A stretch of 64,000 nt of DNA, from NCBI RefSeq assembly GCF_006345805.1, contig NC_043021.1, positions 6,820,001-6,884,000 on the forward strand. The letters are read 5' to 3'. This document shows positions 2,009-63,318 of this stretch, in pieces. The notes beneath the pieces are model-generated. The model did not search any database. It was not told the DNA's origin and worked only from the letters and a program-made list of their open reading frames with translations. Position numbers and translations under genes: made by a program. Source of the DNA: Octopus sinensis (lineage: Eukaryota). Position 1 is the first letter of the stretch. The number at the start of each line of letters is the position of its first letter.

Positions 2009-2359
2009 CAAGCTACTTATCACACAGCAGAGGACAAACAAGGACAGACAAACGGATTAAGTCGATTACATCGACCCCAGTGCATAACTGGTACTTATTT
2101 AATTGACCCTGAAAGCATGAAAGGCAAAGTCGACCTCGGCGGAATTTGAACTCAGAACGTAGCGACAGACGAAATACTGCTAAGCATTTCGCCCAGCATT
2201 CTAATGATTCTGCCAGCTCGCCGCCTTTGGGCTTCTAGTTTCTGTCTACCAAATCTACTCACAAGACTTTGGTTGGTCTGAGGTTGGGACACTTGCCCAA
2301 GCTGACATGCAGTGGGACTGAACACTGAACCATGTAGTTGGGAAGTAAGTTTCTTACCA
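2009..2359 (-). mobile_element. B-A-B SINE chimera, inverted copy of 3585-3935
   Basis: Shares locus-specific junctions with 3585-3935. Confidence 0.85.
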
Positions 2360-3570: not shown

Positions 3571-4024
3571 TAGGCGTAGCTCTATGGTAAGAAACTTACT
3601 TCCCAACTACATGGTTCAGTGTTCAGTCCCACTGCATGGCACCTTGGGCAAGTGTCCCAACCTCAGACCAACCAAAGCCTTGTGAGTAGATTTGGTAGAC
3701 AGAAACTAGAAGCCCAAAGGCGACGAGCTGGCAGAATCGTTAGCACACTGGGCGAAATGCTTAGCAGTATTTCGTCTGTCGCTACGTTCTGAGTTCAAAT
3801 TCCGCCAAGGTCGACTTTGCCTTTCATCCTTTCAGGGTCGATTAAATAAGTACCAGTTACGCACTGGGGTTGATATGATCAATTTAATCCGTTTGTCTGT
3901 CCTTGTTTGTCCTCTGCTGTGTGATAAGTAGCTTGCTTACTAATGCTCCAGGTTCAGTTCCACTGCGAGGCACCTTGGGCAACTATAGCCTCGGACTGAC
4001 CAAAGCCTTATGAGTGGATCCATC

Positions 4025-5709: not shown

Positions 5710-7125
5710 TTAACCCTTTTGTTACCGTATTTATTTTTAGATGCTCTGTGTTTCTTTCAATTACTTTAAATATAACAAAGAATTTAGTAAAATAACATAG
5801 TTATCATTCAGCTAGTGTTAGGGAACATAAATTGTGACTAAGGTTTGGTGGAAGATTTTAATTCAAAACTTATGAAAACAAGACATTTGTACTACAGAGC
5901 CAGAGGCAGTGTCAGCCAGGTTGGTATCGTAAAGGTTAAATATAACAAAGAATTTAGTAAAATAACTTAGTTATCATTAAGCTAGTGTTAGGAACATAAA
6001 TTGTGACTAAGGTTTGGTGGAAGATTTTTAATTCAAAACTTATGAAAACAAGACATTTGTACTACAGAGCCAGAGGCAGTGTCAGCCAGGTTGGTATCGT
6101 AAAGGTTAAATATAACAAAGAATTTAGTAAAATAACTTAGTTATCATTAAGCTAGTGTTAGGAACATAAATTGTGACTAAGGTTTGGTGGAAGATTTTTA
6201 ATTCAAAACTTATGAAAACAAGACATTTGTACTACAGAGCCAGAGCAGTGTCAGCCAGGTTGGTATCGTAAAGGTTAATATAACAAAGAATTTAGTAAAA
6301 TAACTTAGTTATCATTAAGCTAGTGTTAGGAACATAAATTGTGACTAAGGTTTGGTGGAAGATTTTTAATTCAAAACTTATGAAAACAAGACATTTGTAC
6401 TACAGAGCCAGAGGCAGTGTCAGCCAGGTTGGTATCGTAAAGGTTAAATATAACAAAGAATTTAGTAAAATAACTTAGTTATCATTAAGCTAGTGTTAGG
6501 AACATAAATTGTGACTAAGGTTTGGTGGAAGATTTTTAATTCAAAACTTATGAAAACAAGACATTTGTACTACAGAGCCAGAGGCAGTGTCAGCCAGGTT
6601 GGTATCGTAAAGGTTAATATAACAAAGAATTTAGTAAAATAACTTAGTTATCATTAAGCTAGTGTTAGGAACATAAATTGTGACTAAGGTTTGGTGGAAG
6701 ATTTTAATTCAAAACTTATGAAAACAAGACATTTGTACTACAGAGCCAGAGGCAGTGTCAGCCAGGTTGGTATCGAAAAGGTTAAATATAACAAAGAATT
6801 TAGTAAAATAACTTAGTTATCATTAAGCTAGTGTTAGGAACATAAATTGTGACTAAGGTGTGATAGAAGATTTTAATTCAAAACTTATGAAAACAAGACA
6901 TTTGTACTACAGAGCCAGAGGCAGTGTCAGCCAGGTTGGTATCGAAAAGGTTAAATGTAACAAAGAATTTAGTAAAATAACTTAGTTATCATTAAGCTAG
7001 TGTTAGGAACATAAATTGTGACTAAGGTTTGGTGGAAGATTTTTAATTCAAAACTTATGAAAACAAGATATTTTGTACTACAGAGCCAGAGCCGGTTTCA
7101 GCCAGGCTGGTAACGAAAGGGTTAA
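5710..7125 (+). mobile_element. TTAA MITE family F expanded into 8 tandem ~169-bp units
   Basis: TTAA-CCCTTTTGTTACC left end, GGTAACGAAAGGG-TTAA right end; units start at 5771, 5941, 6111, 6279, 6449, 6618, 6787, 6956. Confidence 0.92.
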
Positions 7126-7390
7126 ACAGTATCTGATAATAAAGCTTACCTTTTTTCTCTTTGTAAATGAAATGTAAGAGAGAGAGAGAGGCATACATAT
7201 ATATATATATATATACATACATATATACATACACACAAACCTACATACACACATATATATATACACATACATATATACATACATACATTAACACATATAT
7301 ATATATTACGGAAAAGAAGACCACAAAATGATGATATTGCCTCGCCACAAAGCAACTATTTAATTTCAGCTTAACAGCAACAAAGTCATC

Positions 7391-11860: not shown

Positions 11861-13254
11861 TAGTTCTGTATACACTGTGCCTGAATAAAAGACAGAACAC
11901 ATTAGATAATGTAGTCCCAGATGAACTGTGTCTGAAAAACAAAAACCTTAACCCAACACATTAGATAATGTAGTTCTATATACACTGTGCCTGAATAAAA
12001 GACAGAACACATTAGAAAATATAGTCCTAGATATACTATGTTTGAAAATAAGATGTGGTGGTTACAGCTGGAATATTTCTGATTGATTTTTCTGCTGACT
12101 CAAGGCTGGCTTGAGGACAACAATTGCTTGTTCTGACTTTCGATAATTCTCTTTTCATGAGATAAAAATCGTCATCTGTACCGTGTGCGGCGACATCTGG
12201 AACGAATGTCTGAATGCTTACTCTTGATACATACGTCTCCGCGGGTTGAGACGCAAAATGTATTTTATTTTATTTATTTATTTATGGGGCACCGCCTTGA
12301 AGAATTTTTCAGTCGAATGAATCGACCCAAGTAGTTTTATTTTGAAACCCTGGTACTTATTCCATCGGAAACTTTTGCCGAACCGCTAAGTTGCGGGGAT
12401 ATAAACACACCAACATCGGTTGTTATCAAGCGATAGTGTGAGTCGAACACAGACTCAAAGACACACACACACACATACTACGATGAGCTTTGTTCAGTTT
12501 CTAGCAGAAGACATTGGCCCCAGGTGCAACGCAGTGGGACTGAACCCGGAAGCTTCTTCCCACACAACCACGCTTGCTCGTCAGAGGCGAAAAACTAGTG
12601 TTTTATGACGACAGTGTGTTCAACACACCGACTCATTGAACATACTCTCGCCAAAAAAGAGAGAAGTTTTTCCCCCTTGATGTTTATTACAGCGCTCAGC
12701 ATATTCCACGTCTGAACCGGCCGAGATGTATTAAGAATAAATATGTAAACATTCGTTCATTTCACAGTGTTTATATTCTAGAAGCAAAGAAACCCATATT
12801 TCTACGTCTCCTACGAACTGCAACTATAGGTGAGGAAAGACCTAAACACAATTTAATCGTCAAACGAATTCAATGGCCTAGTTTTCGATTGCATGAAAAC
12901 CACTAACAATGCTCATTAATAATAAACGATGTAAGGGAGGTAACTCGGGAATTTAAACCATCAATGGAGCTTTTACGTAGTCACACGACATGCTAGAAAT
13001 AGCTGTGAAACCTCTCTCAAACTACTCCCTACTGTTTTTTAGAGGAAAAAAGGGTATATGGGATAATAGTGCCTAAGATAAACTATATTTAAAAGGATGA
13101 GGTGGCCACGGCTGGAATGTTTTGATCATAGGGTTACCAAGTATACTACCTTGTGATCTACCTTCAGTTTTGCTGCTAATTCTTTGGTGTTTGGATTAAT
13201 TAATACACCTGTAAGCCTGGTTTCTAGACTTGCTGGAGTTTGTTGTATTATTTG

Positions 13255-13689
13255 ATAAAAGCCTTTTACATGTCCAGAGACGTGCAACCAAACGCATACC
13301 CTCCATCAGACACCTACCATATTCTGAGCGCCTTGTTTCCCTGGGCATGGATTCACTGAAGCTCCGGCGTCTGGCAACGGACTTGGTAAACACCCACAAA
13401 GTTATCAACCACCTCACCAACAACAACACTGAACACCTTTTTGATCTCCATGTGTCTAACACACGTGGACATGCCTACAAAGTCAGAAAACAACACAGCT
13501 CCCATGACTTTCGGAAACATTTTTTCACGCTCAGAGTTGCTGAAGCATGGAATAAACTGCCTGCGTCAGTTGTTGACTGCCATGACACTGCATCCTTTAA
13601 GGCCCTCATGCTTTCCGAAATCCGCCGAAACTACACCTGATTATATATACACTTTAGATGAGTTGTAGTGCACCTGAGCACTGTACACA

Positions 13690-26292: not shown

Positions 26293-27510
26293 ATGGAAGT
26301 TACAGAGGAGCATATTTGGCATATTTGGCATATTTTGCTTTGTGAGTTCAATAGAGGCAACAATGCAACAGAAAGTGTGAGAAATATTAATGCAGTATAT
26401 GGGGATCAGACAATAAACATAAGCCAATATCAATGGTGGTTTCAAAAATTCTGAGCTAGAAACTACAGCCTAAAAGATGAGCCTCGTCCTGAAAGATCTG
26501 TAGAGCTCAACGAGGATGTCCTGCAAACCCTGGTGGAACAAAATCCAATTGTTACTGTTGAGGAAAAAGCAGAGAAAAGTCAGTAAATTGAGTCAATGGG
26601 TTCCTTACAAATTTTCCAAATCTAATCACGTGCAGACAGTGAATGTGTGCTCTTCTTTGCAGTCACGTCCCAAAAATGAACCTCTTTTGTACCGAACAGT
26701 GACTGGTGATGAGAAATGGGTTCTCTATAAGAATGCCAAGTACCAAAGACTGGGTAGGGAAAGGAGAAACACCGGCACCTCAGGCTAAAGAAGGTCTTCA
26801 CCCACATAAGGTGTTGTTATCTGTTTGGTGGGATATGAAAGGTTTAGCCCACTTTGAACTTTTAACCCTTTAGTGTTTAAACCAGCCATATCCCGCCCAA
26901 ATATTCTAAATGTTTTATATTCAAACTGGCGATATCTAGTTTCTCACACTTAACCTACAATGTCATGCTAAAATTAAACAATCACCTCACTGAAGCCTCA
27001 AAGCTATAAGATAATTCAAATTATTAATGCATGATTAATTCAAAACAATTTGAGTGAAAAAGTATTATATTTAACAGAGTATTCTGAGTACTAAAGGGTT
27101 AAACTCAAACCAAACAATAACAAAGGAGATCTACTGTAAGCAGCTTGAGTGGCTTAAGTCAGCACTAGAAGAACAACGACCATCTTTGGTTTCAAGACAA
27201 AAGGTGTTCTTCCATCAGGATAATGCTCGGCCACATGCAGCAAGGATGACATTCCAAAGGCTGGAGCAATTTGAATGGGAAACAATGCCCTACCCACCAT
27301 ATTCGCTGGACATTTCCCCCAACTGATTATCATTTATTCTGCAGTCTTCAAAATCATTTGGACGGAAAACAATATGAATTTAGTAAATGAGATCAGAACA
27401 GTACTGGAGGGGTATTTTTCATCATGGACAAGTGAATTTTAGAAGAGGGGCCTTGCATGTCTATATGGGAGAGCATTGTAGAAAATGAAGGAGAATATAT
27501 TTTAGATTAA
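26293..27510 (+). pseudogene. Mariner transposase pseudogene
   Basis: HILLCEFNRG helix-turn-helix region, WVPY, TGDEKW, HQDNARPH, PYSLDISPTDYHLF with D-34-D spacing; stops, frameshifts and a MITE insertion. Confidence 0.92.
26862..27102. mobile_element. TTAA (piggyBac-type) MITE family G nested in the mariner
   Basis: TTAA-CCCTTTAGT...ACTAAAGGG-TTAA; removing it restores HFELLNSNQTITKEIYCKQL. Confidence 0.9.
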
Positions 27511-40015: not shown

Positions 40016-40351
40016 TTATTAAATTATCGTTAATAAAAATAGAGGCAAGCGAGAATGAGAGACTGTTGCAAAGAAAAATGTAAAATGTGGCCTACAATGA
40101 ATTAATATTATTTATTATTAAACATTAAAATCTACTCCACAGTGAATGCAATGAATATTTAAATTTGCAAGAAATTGGAGTTAAAAAATTCAATAAACTT
40201 CATAAATCAAAATTGTAGGAAATTTCTCAGAACATGAATTTATAAAAATATTTCCAGACGATCAACCCTTTAATAATTCCTTTTAGTACTTTTAGTAAAT
40301 GTTACATACCTAATTAGTAAGCAGCCTTCTCTATTATAGTATAGATTTTTA

Positions 40352-40790
40352 TAAAAAGCACTATCCGAACGTGGCCGATGCCAGCGCCGCCCCGACTGGC
40401 TTCTGTGCCGGTGGCACATAAAAGCACCACCCGAACGTGGCCGATGCCAGCGCCGCCCCGACTGGATCCTGTGCCGGTGGCACATAAAAAGACCATCCGA
40501 ACGTTGCCAGCGCCGCCTTGGCTGGCTTCCGTGCCGCTGGCACGTTAAAAGCTCCAACCGATCGTGACCGATGCCGGACCCCCCCTGGCACCTGTGCAGG
40601 TGGCACGTAAAAAGCACCCACTACACTCGCGGAGTAGTTGGCGTTAGGAAAGGCATCCAGCCATAGAAACTCTGCCAGATCAGACTGGAGCCTGGAGCAG
40701 TCCCTGGCTTCCCAGACCCCGGTCGAACCGTCCAACCCGTGCTAGCGCGGAAAACGGACGTTAAACGATGATGATGAGGAGGAGGAGGAT
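40352..40790 (+). mobile_element. SINE-E with internal ~56-bp tandem repeats
   Basis: Nearly the same as 58371-58843. Confidence 0.88.
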
Positions 40791-41344: not shown

Positions 41345-41813
41345 TTCAGTTTCTGTCTACCAAATCCACTCACAAGGCTTCGGTCGACCCAAGGCTATAG
41401 TAGAAGACAATTGCCCAAGGTGTCACGCAGTGGGACTGAACCCAGAACCACGTGGTTCGTAAGCAAGCTGCTTACCACACAGCCACTCCTATGTAAAAAT
41501 TGTTGCAGCTAACATGTTCATACTCCACCAAACAACTGAGCTATTGGCCCACACAAACATCCTGCCCCACCATGTGCAGTACTCAATACAAGGAACTGAT
41601 GTCGCTGACTATACTATGCCTCAGCCTGCCACCAAGGTGGAGCTCGTATTCTGCTAATATCCTGTCTGAACACATTGGCCTAGAAATAAAGCAAATAGCT
41701 ATTTATACCACATAACCAGAGCTAGCCAATACAAGCCTAAATACCTAGAAGTCCTCCTCAATTTTTCTCAAACTTTCAACCAACCTCTTTACATTAGATA
41801 TCCTCTTTTACTT
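41345..41813 (+). repeat. Direct duplicate of 47279-47746
   Basis: Includes ~325 bp of otherwise unique spacer. Confidence 0.92.
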
Positions 41814-44719: not shown

Positions 44720-45426
44720 TTAACCCTTTCGTTACCGTATTTATTTTGAGATGCTCTGTGTTTCATTCAATTTATTTTAAATATAACAAAGAATTTAGTA
44801 AAATAACTCAGTTATCATTAAGCTAGTGTTAGGAACATAAATTGTGACTAAGGTTTGGTGGAAGATTTTAATTCAAAACTTCTGAAAATAAGATATTTGT
44901 ACTCAGAGCCAGAGGTGGTTTCAGCCGGGTTGGTAATGAAAGGGTTAAGGAATTTAGTAAAAGAACTTAGTTATCATTAAGCTAGTGTTAGGAACATAAA
45001 TTGTGACTAAGGTTTGGTGGAAGATTTTAATTCAAAACTTCTGAAAATAAGATATTTGTACTCAGAGCCAGAGGTGGTTTCAGCCGGGTTGGTAATGAAA
45101 GGGTTAAGGAATTTAGTAAAAGAACTTAGTTATCATTAAGCTAGTGTTAGGAACATAAATTGTGACTAAGGTTTGGTGGAAGATTTTAATTCAAAACTTC
45201 TGAAAATAAGGTATTTGTACTCAGAGCCAGAGGCGGTTTCAGCCGGTTTGGTAATGAAAGGGTTAAGGAATTTAGTAAAATAATTTAGTTATCATTCAGC
45301 TAGTGTTAGGAACATAAATTGTGACAAAGGTTTGGTGGAAGATTTTAATCCAGAACTTATGAAAACAAGACATTTGTACTGCAGAGCCAGAGGCGGTTTT
45401 GGCCGGGCTGGTATCAAAAGGGTTAA
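44720..45426 (+). mobile_element. MITE family F plus three extra 159-bp tandem units
   Basis: Monomer 44720-44948; extra units start at 44949, 45108, 45267. Confidence 0.92.
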
Positions 45427-46159
45427 GGTGCACACGTGTGTGTGTGTGCGTGTGAATGCAGTCTTCTCAGTTATTTGATGTTGCTCAGATATTCTGTCCC
45501 CAAACTGATACAAAGGAAAAAGTCTTTAAGCTTCATTGATAATTCCCAGCACAGAACAAAGATCCGTTTGTTTGCTGACAGATATTTTATCTGTAGCATG
45601 GGAAAGGAAACCGAACTTGCCCTCTATGCAATATCACCTTCATTTCTTAAGGTCATACCTGCTTGTCCTATATACTATGGTTCTCACCACATCCTGAACA
45701 TCTTCCATACACCCAGAATAAAGCTGAAAATTCGAACTTGTTTAAAAAGGAATTTTGAACCTAGTATATTTGATATTTATTTATCTATGTGTGTGTGTGT
45801 GTGTGTCAAGTCAGTTGTTACAACATTGGGTGTGGTTGAACAATGCAAGAAAAGGTGTGACATAAGTGTTCATTTTATATTTAAAATTTTTTTCTTTTGT
45901 ATTTTATTTGATTTGTTTATTTCTATACCTTGTCAAAATTTTTTATATTCTTTTTTTTTTTTTAACTGGTTTCTGTACTGGGTCACGGTCATACTAGAGC
46001 ACTTTTTATGGGTATTTATTTTGTCAATTATGTAGACCCCACCTCTCCCCGATATTTATTATTGGAGTCTGCTATTTTATTTTGATTGATCTCTATTTGT
46101 CAAACCCCTAGGTTATGGTGCACAAAGATAACTAATACTGTCAACCATGAACATAGATA

Positions 46160-56170: not shown

Positions 56171-56711
56171 AAGTAACCTACATTCAACCAATACGATAAT
56201 CCAAGATTATGTTTGGAAAATTCTGGGTCTTGCCACACCAATGCCTCATTCCCAAGACATATATCTCTCTGGTTCTAATCGCAACAAAGAATCAAAGTTC
56301 ATCCGGGTTACCTAGCTGGTAGGATGACAATTGAAGGCAATTTGACTTCTGTTTCTAGCAGATTTAGGGACCATGTATAGGCTCCCTCTGTCATTGCTCC
56401 ATAACACATTTTCCATATCTAAAACTGCATTACCTAGTATGCCATACCTTGACAGAGTGAGGTTTGAGGGGTTTGGCTAGTATTCTATCGGATCAAACAA
56501 CTATGTAACAAGTATGTTAGCTTGGCAGGTTCTAATTCTTTTCACAGCAGTGATTCTCAACTGCTTTTGTTTTGTTGTTTGTTTTCGTTTTTTGTTTTTT
56601 TTCTTATTTTGACTAATTTTTTTTCCTTTGTGTTTTCATTCAGCTCTTGAATTTTTCTTAAAGTTGGATAGGATATGACTAAGCACTTTGTGACTTCTTT
56701 CTCCTCACACT

Positions 56712-56830
<119 letters not shown>

Positions 56831-56951
56831 AATACCAAGCATTATCCCAACCACCACTACAGTTGCCCCAAACAATGTCTGCTGCTCTATTTGCCAAACA
56901 CACCAACTGAGGTATTAACTTCTTCCTACATCATTTTATTAATATCCGTAG

Positions 56952-57446
56952 TGAAGATGCATGGCTTAGTGGTTAGGGGATTCAGCTCACGATTGTAAGG
57001 TTGTAAGTTCGATTCTCGGTGGCATGCCCTGTCCTTGAGCAAGACACTTTATTTCGCATTGCTCCAGTCCACTCATTTGGCAAAAATGAGTAGTACTTAT
57101 AGGCAATTTCTACTCTTCTCCTCTGGAAGCCATCTACTCACAATACCAGAGGGCGCACACTCTCCTACCCTGATGTAATCTCCAAGGATACAGGCATCCA
57201 GCAACAGGACCTCCGTAATGCCATGATGGACCGTGAAGTCTGGCGTAGCATGGTAAATTCCATTGTCTCAACCACGGTCGAACAATGATGATGATAATGA
57301 TGAGTACTTATATTTCAAAGGACCAGCCTGTATCGTGATGTATCTCCTTGAAGACCATTAAGGGTATGCATGTCTGTGGAGTACTCAGCCATAAGCTGTT
57401 CTATCGATCAAATCAACGGGAGCCCTTGTCATCGTAACAGAGTGCC
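56952..57446 (+). mobile_element. SINE-D head with T1 tail, interrupted by an RTE fragment
   Basis: Head, core and tail motifs flank 57102-57302. Confidence 0.8.
57102..57302 (+). mobile_element. RTE-type LINE extreme 3' end inserted in a SINE-D
   Basis: LLLWKPSTHNTRGRTLSYPDVISKDTGIQQQDLRNAMMDREVWRSMVNSIVSTTVEQ*, (TGA)n tail, TSD AGTACTTATA at 57092-57101 and 57303-57312. Confidence 0.85.
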
Positions 57447-57474: not shown

Positions 57475-58186
57475 GAAGGTGGTAAGCAGGCAGAATCATT
57501 GGTACGCTGGGCAAAATGCTTATAGGCATTTCATCCATCTTTACATTCCGAGTTCAAATTTTGCCTTTCATTCTTTTGGGGTCAATAAAATAAGTACCAA
57601 TTGAACATTGGGGTCAATATACTTGACTTCTCCCCTTCCCCCGAAATTGCTGGCCTTGTGCCCAAACTTGAAACCAATATTAATGGCACGTAAAAAGCAC
57701 CCACTACACTCTAGGAGTGGTTGGCGTTAGGAAGGGCATCCAGCTGTAGAAACTCTGCCAGATCAAGATTGGAGCCTGGTGCAGCCATTTGGTTCGCCAG
57801 TCCTCAGTCAAATCGTCCAACCCATGCTAGCATGGAAAGTGGACGTTAAACGATGATGATGATGGTGGTGGTGGTGGTGGTGGTGCTGGCGGTGCTGGTG
57901 CTGGTGGTGGTGGTGGTGGTGGTGGTGGTGGTGGTGGTGGTGGTGATGATGATGATGAATAAATAGTTAGGCAGTGAGCTGGCAGAATCATTAGCATGCC
58001 TGGCAAAATGCTTAGCTGCATTTGGTCAATCTTTACATTCTGAGTTCAAATCTCACTGAGGTCGGCTTTGCCTTTCAGGGTCAATAAAATAAGTACCAGT
58101 TGAACAGTGGGGGGTCAATGTAATTAATTGACTAAATCCCTCCCCTGAAATCACTGGCCTTGTCCCGAAATTTTGAAACCAGTATT
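57475..58186 (+). mobile_element. SINE-A2 (57475-57682), SINE-E (57683-57958), SINE-A2 (57969-58186)
   Basis: Family motifs separated by copies of ATAAATAGT. Confidence 0.8.
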
Positions 58187-58370
58187 CATAAATAGTGTTA
58201 CTTAATTCTCTCTATTTTTTTTGTTCTATTCTTTTATACATCGAACACTTCTTCATCTTACAAATCTAGGTCAATATGTGTTAGTAACAAGGTCCAACAA
58301 CTATGTCCGTTACTATCACCAATTGACTTTTAAAGTTCAGCTCAGCTCTTATTTGCATTGTCAATATTGT

Positions 58371-58843
58371 GATACCTGTGCCGGTGGCACATAAAAAGCA
58401 CCATCCATACGTGGTCGATGCCAGCACCGCCCCGAATGGCTTCTGTGCCGGTGGCACATAAAAAGCACCTTCCGAACGTGGTCAATGCCAGCGCCGCCAC
58501 GACTGGCTTCTGTGCCGGTGGCACATAAAAAGCACCTTCCGAACGAACGTGGCCGTTGCCAGCGCCGCCTTGGCTAGCTTCCGTGCCGGTGGCACGTTAA
58601 AAGCTCCAACCGATCGTAGCCGATGCCAGACCCCCCCTGGCACCTGTGCAGGTGGCACGTAAAAAGCACCCACTACACTCGCGGGGTGGTTGGCGTTAGG
58701 AAGGGCATCCAGCTGTAGAAACTCTGCCAGATCAGACTGGAGCCTGGTGCAGCCCCTGGCTTCCCAGACCCCGGTCGAACCGTCCAACCCGTGCTAGCGC
58801 GGAAAACGGACGTTAAACGATGATGATGATGATGATGATGATG
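58371..58843 (+). mobile_element. SINE-E flanked by a ~187-bp direct duplication
   Basis: Duplication 58184-58370 and 58844-59029; (GAT)n tail. Confidence 0.9.
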
Positions 58844-59100
58844 ATTCATAAATAGTGTTACTTAATTCTCTCTATTTTCTTTTTTTATTCTTTTATACAT
58901 CGAACACTTCTTCGTCTTACAAATCTAGGTCAATATGTGTTATTAACAAGGTCCAACAACTACGTCCGTTACTATCGCCAATTGACTTTTAAAGTTCAAC
59001 TCAGCTCTTATCTGGATTCTCAATATTGTCACAGAAGATTCAACTAATTTCATTGGAGTTATCTCCCTGCCTCGCAGGTTTTTCTTTTTTTTTTCCACCT

Positions 59101-59722
59101 TTAACCCTTTAGTGTTTAAACCCGGCCATATCCAGCCCAAAGTATTCTACAAGTTTTATATTCAAACTGGCCAGATCCAGCCTCTCACACCTAACCTACA
59201 TTGACATTCTAAAAATTGGCATGCCATGTCCTTGAGCAAGACACTTTATTTCACATTGCTCCAGTCCACTCATTTGGCAAAAATGAGTAGTACTTATAGG
59301 CAATTTCTACTCTTCTCCTCTGGAAGTCATCTACTTACAATACCAGAGGGCGCATACTCTCCTACCCTGATGTAATCTCCAGGGATACAAGCATCCAGCA
59401 ACAGGACCTCCGTAATGCTATGATGGACAGTGAAGTCTGGCGTAGCATGGTAAATTCTTGATCTGGCAGAGTTTCTACAGCTGGATGCCCTTCCTAATGC
59501 CAACCACTCCTAGAGTGTAGTGGGTGCTTTTACGTGCCATTAATATTGTCCAGTGTGAGAGAGACCAGTGTGAGGAGAAAGAAGTCACAAACTGCTTAGT
59601 CATATCCTATCCAATAACATCATTGAAACTTCAAAGCTATAAGATCATGCATGATTAATTCAAAACAATTTGAGTGAAAAAGTATTACATTTAACAGAAT
59701 AATCTGAACACTAAAGGGTTAA
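59101..59722. mobile_element. MITE family G carrying a ~400-bp templated insertion
   Basis: Same termini as 26862-27102, TTAA on both sides; 59217-59614 is foreign sequence. Confidence 0.88.
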
Positions 59723-60014
59723 ATTTCAAATGCGACAGGAGAGAGTTTTTGTCTTCTGATTACAAGGATATCGTCTGTTAATCAATGTTTTTCAATTCAC
59801 TGTATAGCACATATTTGTTACTATCTAGTTGTTTAGTCTCAACTAGTCTCAACTAGTCCCGGGACAGAATTTGTTCTGCTCTAATTTTATTGAAATTTAT
59901 CATTTCTGCACTGAATTTTTGGCGATGTTGCTGTTGTTGTTGTACCTGAAAGTGATATCAGCATATCTCCTTCTCCCACTCGCCCACCTGATACACACCA
60001 ATAAAGAAACACAC

Positions 60015-60276
60015 CACACACACACACACACTCTCTCTCGCTCTCGCTCTCTCTCGCTCTCTCTCTTTCTCTTTCTTTCTCTCTCTTTCTGTCTCTCTTT
60101 CTCCCTCCCTCTCTCTCTTTCTGTCTCTCTTTCTCCCTCTCTCTCTTTCTTTCTCTCTCTCTCTCTTTCTGTCTCTCTTTCTCCCTCTCTCTCTTTCTTT
60201 CTCTCTCTCTTTCTTTCCCTCTCTCCTTCTCTCTCTTTCTCTCTCTCACATGTGCACTTGCACACACGCATACACA

Positions 60277-63203: not shown

Positions 63204-63318
63204 TAACCCTTTAGCATTTAAACCAGCCATATCTGGCCAGTATATTGTTTTATGTCCAAATTAGCCAGATCCAGCCTCTCATACCCACCCTACAATGTCA
63301 GTCTGAAAAAGTAAATTA
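63204..63318. mobile_element. MITE family G, left part only
   Basis: taaccctttagcatttaaaccagccatatc... matches the start of family G. Confidence 0.7.

What the first reader, a model, noticed from the sequence alone, without database searches (positions are those of the whole stretch)
59217..59614. Three-fragment templated insertion stitched from nearby DNA inside a MITE
Seen: the family-G MITE is interrupted by (1) a direct copy of 57020-57260 (241 bp, 9 substitutions), (2) an inverted copy of 57675-57768, joined by TC microhomology, (3) a short CCAGTGTGAG echo, then an inverted copy of 56664-56721, rejoining the MITE at CAA(T). Fragments 1 and 2 include junctions private to this locus, so the donors are local (1.5-3 kb away). 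About 4% divergence argues against mis-assembly. Established: chained templated insertions with microhomology are signatures of MMBIR/FoSTeS or polymerase-theta end joining. Inference: a fixed germline record of multi-step template switching, possibly triggered at the MITE.
Basis: partly seen in the sequence, partly recalled or inferred. Interest (0 to 1): 0.75.

Follow-up and report, generated by a model that had tools for sequence, protein, structure and literature searches.

The report
Patchwork repair insertion copied from neighbours
A 398-base insertion that splits a small piggyBac-type transposon is stitched from three pieces of DNA lying 1.7-2.9 kb upstream: the inherited scar of an old chromosome-break repair, and a very clean example of a process already catalogued in vertebrates rather than a new mechanism.

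Summary
A piggyBac-like MITE (59105-59718, TTAA duplications on both sides) is interrupted at 59217-59614. The insert consists of a direct copy of 57020-57260 (241 bp, 9 substitutions), an inverted copy of 57675-57768 joined at a TC overlap, one stray T, a 10-nt echo CCAGTGTGAG, and an inverted copy of 56664-56721 that rejoins the MITE at CAA. Only one base has no template.

The donors are local. Fragment 1 crosses the junction of a LINE 3' end nested in a SINE, which has its own 10-bp target-site duplication. Fragment 2 crosses the boundary between a SINE 3' end and a 5'-truncated second element. Fragment 3 is unique sequence abutting a (TC)57 tract.

The insert has no target-site duplication and no tail, and it mixes strands, so it is not a transposition. 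The 11 substitutions against one indel argue against an assembly or amplification chimera.

The best reading is one double-strand break repaired by several rounds of microhomology-primed copying. This matches "repair-mediated duplication" (Pace et al. 2009). The pathway (SDSA-like, polymerase theta or MMBIR) cannot be told from sequence. Nothing shows that the MITE caused the break. It is a new member of a known kind, of modest interest.

The parts
59101..59104 (+). TTAA target-site duplication, left, of the host MITE
   Evidence: TTAA|CCCTTTAGTG at 59101; the same arrangement is found at 26862
59105..59216 (+). left half of the piggyBac-like MITE (TIR CCCTTTAGTGTT)
   Evidence: 59097-59214 = 26858-26973 at 86%
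59217..59457 (+). fragment 1: direct copy of 57020-57260 (SINE-X 3' part plus the first 159 bp of a nested LINE tail)
   Evidence: 241 bp, 9 substitutions, no gap; T59217 could also be MITE sequence (1-nt microhomology)
59456..59548 (+). fragment 2: inverted copy of 57675-57768; TC (59456-59457) shared with fragment 1
   Evidence: 1 substitution (CpG to TpG in the insert) and a 1-nt T-run deletion; carries 9-10 nt of the SINE-A 3' end beyond the 5' truncation point of SINE-B
59549..59549 (+). single untemplated base (T)
   Evidence: matches neither the fragment 2 donor (would be G) nor the fragment 3 donor (would be A)
59550..59559 (+). 10-nt echo CCAGTGTGAG, a second copy of donor 56704-56713 (minus strand): aborted synthesis followed by re-priming at GAG
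   Evidence: the only other exact CCAGTGTGAG sites in the window are the fragment 3 donor and fragment 3 itself
59557..59614 (+). fragment 3: inverted copy of 56664-56721 (50 nt unique sequence plus 8 nt of (TC)n); CAA (59612-59614) shared with the right MITE half
   Evidence: 58 nt, 1 substitution
59612..59718 (+). right half of the MITE (TIR AACACTAAAGGG)
   Evidence: 59612-59723 = 26979-27103 at 81%
59719..59722 (+). TTAA target-site duplication, right
57020..57260 (+). donor of fragment 1
   Evidence: spans the private SINE-X / nested LINE junction at 57101|57102
57102..57302 (+). 5'-truncated LINE 3' end nested in SINE-X, with an (ATG)n tail, flanked by the 10-bp TSD AGTACTTATA (57092-57101 and 57303-57312)
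   Evidence: SINE-X is collinear with its relatives once this piece is removed; open frame ...AMMDREVWRSMVNSIVSTTVEQ*
57675..57768 (-). donor of fragment 2; crosses the SINE-A 3' end / 5'-truncated SINE-B boundary at about 57684
56664..56721 (-). donor of fragment 3: unique sequence running into (TC)57 (56714-56828)
26866..27098 (+). intact sibling MITE that defines the empty site (CTAAAATTAAACAATCAC across the break point)

Best explanation
One double-strand break near the middle of an already inserted piggyBac-type MITE was repaired by synthesis-dependent end joining that used nearby ectopic templates. A resected 3' end primed on 1-3 nt of microhomology about 2 kb upstream and copied 241 nt (57020 to 57260). 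Further rounds of dissociation and re-priming copied 94 nt from the opposite strand (57768 to 57675). An aborted 10-nt stretch was followed by 58 nt from the (TC)n border at 56721 to 56664. The extended end(s) then annealed to the other side of the break at CAA.

The rounds may have run from one end of the break or from both. If from both, the left end made fragment 1, the right end made fragment 3, then the echo, then fragment 2, and the two met at TC.

The result is a net gain of about 395 bp with at most 4 bp lost. It was transmitted through the germline and has since diverged about 2.8% from its donors.

Shown: the anatomy, the local origin of the donors, and the absence of transposition hallmarks. 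Inferred: a single event, a two-ended break, and the order of the switches. Unknown: which polymerase or pathway did the copying, and what caused the break.
For: - Every base but one is accounted for by three local templates.
- The donors are embedded in longer elements, so the direction is donor to insert. Fragment 1 starts inside SINE-X and crosses the 5' junction of a LINE tail that has its own 10-bp TSD.
- Fragment 2 carries 9-10 nt of the SINE-A 3' end upstream of a 5'-truncated SINE-B. Five other SINE-B copies have different sequence at that point.
- Fragment 2 also shares B1-specific variants (CTCTAGGAG, GATCAAGA).
- No better or equal match exists anywhere else in the 64 kb.
- The empty-site reconstruction is collinear with the sibling MITE. 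There is no TSD and no A-rich or microsatellite tail.
- Junction overlaps are T, TC, GAG and CAA.
- The echo is most simply an abortive copy of the same donor. [quoted passage not shown]
- Divergence does not differ between the fragments (9/241 against 2/151, Fisher p = 0.22), which fits one event.
- Size, donor distance, microhomology, small deletion, filler and chimeric donors all fall within the published description of repair-mediated duplications. In that study 753 of 1,136 donors lay under 3 kb away, inserts reached 619 bp, microhomology was 2-9 nt, deletions 1-15 nt, filler 1-68 nt, and 20 inserts were two-donor chimeras, 5 of them with the second donor within 3.5 kb of the first (PMC2671141).
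Against: - Only one haplotype and 64 kb are available. There are no reads, no orthologous empty site and no genome-wide copy count.
- Microhomologies of 1-3 nt are barely above the chance expectation.
- One junction (fragment 2 to echo) has no microhomology and carries one untemplated base.
- Three donors plus an echo is more complex than the two-donor chimeras reported for repair-mediated duplications.
- The substitutions are lopsided: 9 of 10 GC/AT differences have A/T in the insert (p = 0.02). Plain symmetric ageing does not predict this.
- A two-step history, with a larger capture later deleted, cannot be excluded.
Confidence: 0.62

Rival explanations
1. The event was replicative template switching at a stalled or collapsed fork (FoSTeS/MMBIR), not repair of a two-ended break. 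The nascent strand left the MITE, copied three nearby templates on both strands, and returned to its original template.
For: The chain mixes direct and inverted segments joined at 2-3 nt microhomology, which is the classic FoSTeS/MMBIR picture. Fragment 3 starts or ends 8 nt inside a pure (TC)57 tract, a sequence known to impede forks (my own knowledge). The excess of GC-to-AT changes in the insert could reflect mutagenic long-tract synthesis.
Against: The chain returns to within 4 nt or fewer of where it left, and no flanking copy-number change is seen. This is what second-end capture at a two-ended break predicts. The operational MMBIR templated-insertion signature (an inverted template within 100 bp of the insertion; PMC8421209) is not met: the templates lie 1.7-2.9 kb away and the largest is direct. 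Sequence alone cannot separate the two models.
Confidence: 0.25
2. The break came from transposase activity: aberrant excision of a piggyBac-family element that had nested at an internal TTAA of the MITE, or transposase cleavage there. The templated filler would then be an excision footprint (abortive gap repair).
For: The host element is piggyBac-like, with TTAA duplications and CCC...GGG ends. The break point aligns with a TTAA in the sibling copy (CTAAAATTAAACAAT). Filler DNA at transposon excision sites is well known for Ac/Ds, Mu and P elements (my own knowledge).
Against: piggyBac excision is normally seamless (my own knowledge). The half copy at 63204-63309 has no TTAA at this position, and the alignment around the break is ambiguous. 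No remnant of a nested element is present.
Confidence: 0.07
3. The composite is a mobile or dispersed unit. It could be a Pack-type MITE that carries captured host fragments and has copies elsewhere, or a chimeric retrocopy made by LINE reverse-transcriptase template switching or twin priming.
For: All three pieces lie between intact TIRs with TTAA duplications, which is the architecture of Pack-type transduplication. Two of the pieces contain retroelement sequence.
Against: The donors are within 3 kb and carry locus-private junctions, so capture happened in place. No second copy of the composite or its junctions exists in the window. The insert has no TSD and no tail, and it combines both strands and unique non-transcribed-looking sequence, which a retrocopy would not.
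Confidence: 0.05
4. The structure is an artefact: a chimeric read or an assembly join, for example a strand-displacement amplification chimera. Such chimeras typically join inverted nearby segments at microhomology.
For: Inverted nearby segments joined at short overlaps resemble amplification chimeras (my own knowledge). No read data are available to check.
Against: An artefactual copy would be identical to its templates. Here there are 11 substitutions (8 transitions, 3 of the 11 at CpG sites) and only one homopolymer indel across 392 aligned bases. The two MITE halves flank the insert in the correct order and orientation.
Confidence: 0.03

Closest known systems
Repair-mediated duplication (RD): capture of proximal chromosomal DNA at double-strand breaks by SDSA (Pace, Sen, Batzer and Feschotte 2009, PMC2671141)
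   Same: An insertion of at least 50 bp interrupts a transposable element. The donors are on the same chromosome less than 3 kb away. The insert is within the published size range (up to 619 bp). The junctions show microhomology, a tiny deletion and filler, with no TSD or tail. Chimeric inserts from two donors are described, with the second donor within 3.5 kb of the first in 5 cases.
   Different: Here there are three donor segments plus an aborted 10-nt copy, against two in the published chimeras. Two of the three are inverted. The donors are themselves repeat mosaics, which that pipeline excluded by requiring a single-copy donor. The host is an unidentified non-vertebrate-looking animal genome, and the published survey covered vertebrates only.
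Synthesis-dependent MMEJ / polymerase-theta-mediated end joining with complex templated insertions (Yu and McVey 2010, PMC2943611)
   Same: Insertions built from several copies of nearby sequence by repeated priming, synthesis and dissociation. The echo CCAGTGTGAG with re-priming at GAG is exactly that behaviour.
   Different: Typical SD-MMEJ/TMEJ templates lie within tens of bases of the break and the inserts are a few to tens of nt (and my own knowledge). Here the tracts are 58-241 nt and the templates 1.7-2.9 kb away. Dependence on polymerase theta cannot be tested.
MMBIR/FoSTeS templated insertions (for example Osia et al. 2021, PMC8421209)
   Same: Chained template switches at microhomology, involving both strands.
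   Different: The operational signature, an inverted template within 100 bp, is not met. There is no associated copy-number change, and the chain returns to the original site.
Filler DNA and abortive gap repair in DNA transposons, and Pack-type transduplication (Ac/Ds, Mu, P elements, Pack-MULEs; my own knowledge, not read here)
   Same: Host fragments joined at short homologies end up between transposon ends.
   Different: Here the MITE is otherwise intact, with no internal deletion. The break is internal rather than at the element ends. There is no evidence that the composite has moved.

Membership tests
Repair-mediated duplication (SDSA capture of proximal DNA) | Insertion of at least 50 bp that interrupts an otherwise continuous TE copy | tested here: met
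   the joined MITE halves are collinear with the sibling at 26866-27098.
Repair-mediated duplication (SDSA capture of proximal DNA) | Insert is a non-tandem copy of a donor on the same chromosome, typically less than 5 kb away | tested here: met
   donors 1,688, 1,957 and 2,836 bp upstream.
Repair-mediated duplication (SDSA capture of proximal DNA) | [quoted passage not shown] | tested here: inconclusive
   The donor junctions are locus-private by TSD and truncation logic, and there is no other copy in 64 kb. The whole genome was not available, and the metagenome scans were empty and uninformative.
Repair-mediated duplication (SDSA capture of proximal DNA) | Breakpoints show microhomology, a small deletion and/or filler, with no TSD and no poly-A tail | tested here: met
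   overlaps T, TC, GAG and CAA; at most 4 nt lost; 1-nt filler plus 10-nt echo; no TSD or tail.
Repair-mediated duplication (SDSA capture of proximal DNA) | Empty orthologous or allelic site exists | not testable with these tools
   No related genome is reachable. ORF look-ups returned nothing.
MMBIR templated insertion (MMB-TI signature) | Inverted copy of a template within about 100 bp of the insertion, flanked by microhomology (PMC8421209) | tested here: not met
   templates are 1.7-2.9 kb away and the largest fragment is direct.
MMBIR/FoSTeS | Origin at a one-ended break or stalled fork, often with copy-number change of flanking DNA | not testable with these tools
   Sequence shows only that the chain returned to within 4 nt or fewer of the break.
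Polymerase-theta end joining / SD-MMEJ | Templates immediately flank the break and the inserts are short | tested here: not met
   tracts of 58-241 nt copied from more than 1.6 kb away.
Polymerase-theta end joining / SD-MMEJ | Iterative synthesis, dissociation and re-priming that leaves overlapping copies | tested here: met
   the echo CCAGTGTGAG, then a restart 15 nt back at GAG.
Retrotransposition (target-primed reverse transcription, chimeric retrocopy, twin priming) | Target-site duplication and a 3' tail, with fragments derived from RNA of one strand | tested here: not met
   no TSD, no tail, both strands used, and unique non-repeat DNA included. By contrast, the nested LINE tail in the donor shows a 10-bp TSD and an (ATG)n tail.
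Pack-type transduplicating MITE | Composite element present in more than one copy, each with its own TSD | tested here: inconclusive
   No second copy in the window. The genome was not available.
piggyBac-superfamily MITE (host element) | TTAA target-site duplication and terminal inverted repeats beginning CCC...GGG | tested here: met
   TTAA|CCCTTTAGTGTT ... AACACTAAAGGG|TTAA at both 59101-59722 and 26862-27102.

The most novel reading that the evidence does not exclude
The insert preserves more than the joining pattern. Its one-sided excess of G/C-to-A/T differences (9 against 1) may be a fossil of mutagenic repair synthesis or single-strand DNA damage during the event. Together with the break falling on a TTAA inside a piggyBac-type MITE, this would record a transposase-induced break repaired by error-prone, multi-template synthesis. 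That would be the first step in making a Pack-type, host-fragment-carrying piggyBac MITE.
Probability: 0.08. Interest if true: 0.55.

Novelty: new member of a known kind. Interest (0 to 1): 0.3.

Why it matters
This is an unusually legible natural example of multi-template break repair. All 398 bases but one are assigned to a template. Donor identity is proven by locus-private retroelement junctions, and an aborted synthesis step is preserved.

Such cases show that short-range templated capture duplicates and shuffles DNA in the germline of animals beyond the vertebrates surveyed so far. They also show how fragments of SINEs, LINEs and unique DNA can be placed between transposon ends.

It does not reveal a new mechanism or open a long-standing question. 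Its value is as a worked example, and as a search template for a genome-wide census of TEs interrupted by copies of sequence less than 5 kb away.

Tried and rejected
1. Independent copies of the locus. I looked up four ORFs that cross or adjoin the junctions, or lie elsewhere in the window, in public assemblies. None is on record.
2. Dispersed-unit test. An exact scan of metagenome contigs for the F1/F2 junction found nothing. A control scan for the conserved SINE-B core also found nothing. The host's DNA is therefore not in that collection, and the negative says nothing.
3. MITE hairpin as the cause of the break. The sibling MITE folds no better than shuffles (-16.2 kcal/mol, z = -0.57). Rejected for lack of support.
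4. Composite SINE family instead of a private junction. Rejected. With 57102-57302 and one TSD copy removed, SINE-X is collinear with its relatives at 14.6 kb and 10.9 kb, and the 10-bp TSD is exact.
5. Echo as a later tandem slippage. The two 15-nt units differ at 4 of their last 5 positions, whereas GAGAGAGA+CCAGTGTGAG matches the donor's (TC)n border exactly. Abortive templated synthesis is the simpler account.
6. tRNA scan of 55-61 kb. Nothing was found, so the tRNA-like SINE heads are too decayed for ARAGORN.
7. A 469-bp direct pair at 41345/47279 looked like LTRs. It turned out to be two copies of another SINE.
8. Host identification by protein search was not run, because it would not change the verdict. 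From memory the SINE sequences resemble cephalopod SINEs; this is a lead, not a test.

Full report
**Setting**

The window is 39% G+C and dense in microsatellites, SINE-like repeats and LINE fragments, so it comes from an animal genome. I did not identify the host. The SINE sequences remind me of cephalopod SINEs, but that is memory, not a test.

**1. The observation**

| Piece | Insert coordinates | Source | Differences |
|---|---|---|---|
| F1 | 59217-59457 | 57020-57260, direct | 241 nt, 9 substitutions, no gap |
| F2 | 59456-59548 | reverse complement of 57768-57675 | 1 substitution, 1-nt loss in a T run |
| filler | 59549 | none (T) | untemplated |
| echo | 59550-59559 | CCAGTGTGAG, second copy of the F3 donor | exact |
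| F3 | 59557-59614 | reverse complement of 56721-56664 | 1 substitution |

- F1 and F2 share TC.
- F3 begins with GAGAGAGA, that is 8 nt of the donor's (TC)57 tract.
- F3 ends in CAA, which is also the first three bases of the resumed MITE.
- E-values are 1e-111, 2e-40 and 4e-23, so chance is not an issue.
- All 398 bases except T59549 have a template.

**2. The host element**

- The flanks 59105-59216 and 59612-59718, once joined, are collinear with an uninterrupted copy at 26866-27098.
- Both copies carry TTAA|CCCTTTAGTGTT ... AACACTAAAGGG|TTAA. These are the hallmarks of a piggyBac-superfamily MITE.
- At the break the sibling reads CTAAAATTAAACAATCAC. The interrupted copy reads CTAAAAAT[insert]CAATAAC. 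At most 3-4 nt were lost.
- There is no target-site duplication around the insert and no A-rich or microsatellite tail.

**3. Are the donors really local?**

Identity alone would not prove this. The window holds other repeat pairs at 93-97% identity, and parts of F1 and F2 are SINE sequence with several copies in the window. The junctions decide it.

F1:
- 56937-57101 is the front part of a SINE ('X') that has four relatives in the window.
- At 57102 a 201-bp piece begins that none of them has. It carries an open frame ending ...AMMDREVWRSMVNSIVSTTVEQ*, running into an (ATG)n tail. This looks like a 5'-truncated LINE 3' end.
- The piece is flanked by an exact 10-bp duplication, AGTACTTATA, at 57092-57101 and 57303-57312.
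- After 57312 SINE-X resumes, collinear with its relatives.
- F1 covers 82 nt of SINE-X and the first 159 nt of this nested piece, so it copies a junction made by one particular retrotransposition.

F2:
- SINE 'A' copies end at ...TTGAAACCAATATTAAT, each followed by different sequence.
- At 57684 a 5'-truncated copy of a second element ('B') starts.
- Five other B copies read ...GTGCAGGTG|GCACGT at that point.
- The insert reads CAATATTAATG|GCACGT, as only the 57.7-kb locus does. It also shares that copy's private variants.

F3:
- It is unique sequence next to a microsatellite, with no other match.

Three fragments, each with its only or best template within 2.9 kb, two of them across private junctions: the donors are local. 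Because the donors continue into their own elements on both sides, the direction is donor to insert.

**4. What it is not**

- Not a transposition or retrocopy. It has no TSD and no tail, it uses both strands, and it includes unique DNA. The nested LINE tail in the donor shows what a real retrotransposition looks like here.
- Not a dispersed unit within the window.
- Unlikely to be an assembly or amplification chimera. The copies differ by 11 substitutions (8 transitions, 3 of the 11 at CpG sites) and only one homopolymer indel.
- Reads could not be examined. ORF-based look-ups of public assemblies returned nothing.
- Two metagenome scans, one for the junction and one for a SINE control, were both empty, so that negative carries no weight.

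**5. Mechanism**

The anatomy is that of a double-strand break filled by repeated microhomology-primed copying of nearby templates.

- Read left to right: the end primes at T(T), copies 241 nt, and switches at TC to the opposite strand 508 nt further on. It copies 94 nt and adds one base. It then copies 10 nt of a third template, falls off, re-anneals 15 nt back through GAG inside the (GA)n run, and copies 58 nt. It joins the other end at CAA.
- Equally possible: both ends were extended. The left end made F1. The right end made F3, then the echo (re-priming at CTC), then F2. The two met at TC.
- The return to within 4 nt or fewer of the break fits second-end capture at a two-ended break better than a one-ended fork collapse. 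Sequence alone cannot decide this.
- Microhomologies of 1-3 nt are only mildly unusual (P(>=2) = 0.16, P(>=3) = 0.05 per junction).
- Divergence does not differ between fragments (Fisher p = 0.22), consistent with one event.
- Total divergence is 11/392, or 2.8%. This implies many generations since the event, so it was transmitted through the germline. Fixation is untested.
- Another duplication, 58184-58370 against 58844-59029, lies between donors and acceptor. At 5.9% divergence it is probably older.

**6. The trigger**

- The MITE does not form a notable hairpin (z = -0.57).
- The break coincides with a TTAA in the sibling copy, which is the piggyBac target. This invites, but does not support, a transposase-related break.
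- I give that reading about 7%.

**7. An unexplained detail**

- Nine of the ten GC/AT differences have A/T in the insert (binomial p = 0.02).
- Possible causes are mutagenic synthesis, single-strand damage, a diverged allelic template, or chance.
- Only two sites can be polarised with other repeat copies. The CpG site in F2 is derived in the insert. Site 59253 looks derived in the donor.

**8. Comparison with what is known**

- Repair-mediated duplication (PMC2671141) is the closest match.
  - The authors searched for TEs interrupted by copies of other genomic DNA and found 1,136 cases in human.
  - 753 of these had donors less than 3 kb away, and inserts reached 619 bp.
  - Junctions showed microhomology of 2-9 nt, deletions of 1-15 nt and filler of 1-68 nt.
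  - 20 inserts were chimeras of two donors, 5 of them with the second donor within 3.5 kb of the first. The authors attributed these to SDSA.
  - The present case meets every testable criterion. It exceeds the published chimeras only in having three donor segments, two of them inverted, and a preserved abortive step.
[quoted passage not shown] The echo matches that behaviour, but the tract lengths and template distances here are far larger.
- The operational MMBIR signature is an inverted template within 100 bp (PMC8421209). It is not met.

I therefore file the feature as a member of the repair-mediated-duplication class. It works like an iterated synthesis-dependent end joining. The polymerase and pathway remain open.

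**9. Verdict**

- Observation: confirmed.
- Interpretation: supported in its core. It is not shown for 'fixed' or for 'triggered at the MITE'.
- Novelty: a new member of a known kind, and an especially clean one.
- Interest: 0.3.

Noticed in passing
window 58184-58370 and 58844-59029: A 186-187-bp direct repeat (94% identical) exactly brackets a retroelement. The element consists of 67-bp internal tandem repeats (58374-58670), a SINE-B tail and (GAT)9 ending at 58845. It looks like an exceptionally long target-site duplication, or else another repair-associated duplication.
   Followed up: partly
window 57102-57302 (TSDs 57092-57101 and 57303-57312): A 201-bp 5'-truncated LINE 3' end is nested in a SINE. 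It has an open frame ending ...AMMDREVWRSMVNSIVSTTVEQ*, an (ATG)n tail and a perfect 10-bp TSD AGTACTTATA. The (ATG/GAT)n tail is shared with the SINE-B family, which suggests one LINE partner mobilises both.
   Followed up: partly
window 26862-27102, 59101-59722, 63204-63309: A piggyBac-type MITE family of about 220-235 bp with TTAA duplications and 12-bp TIRs CCCTTTAGTGTT. There are two full copies (14-19% diverged) and one half copy abutting a SINE-B-like element.
   Followed up: partly
window 59217-59614 against its donors: The substitutions are lopsided. At 9 of the 10 GC/AT differences the insert has A/T where the donor has G/C (p = 0.02). This is not expected from symmetric decay.
   Followed up: partly
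window 5766-7126 and 44791-45428: A satellite array of 8 x 170 bp (97% matches) and a related array of 4 x 159 bp, 38 kb apart.
   Followed up: no
window 56714-56828 and 60031-60247: A perfectly pure (TC)57.5 microsatellite. The fragment 3 donor stops 8 nt inside it. A degenerate CT-rich array with a 16-nt period lies 300 bp downstream of the MITE.
   Followed up: no
window 58374-58670 and 40351-40620: The SINE-B family carries 2-4.4 internal 67-bp tandem units (CTGTGCCGGTGGCACATAAAAAGCACC...). The two full-length copies are 90.7% identical over 452 bp.
   Followed up: no
window 13230-13640: A 136-aa open frame resembling the C-terminal end of a LINE ORF2. It was not analysed further.
   Followed up: no
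window 2009-2359 and 3585-3935: A 351-bp inverted pair at 95% identity, 1.2 kb apart. It is probably two SINE-A copies in opposite orientation, but this was not checked.
   Followed up: no
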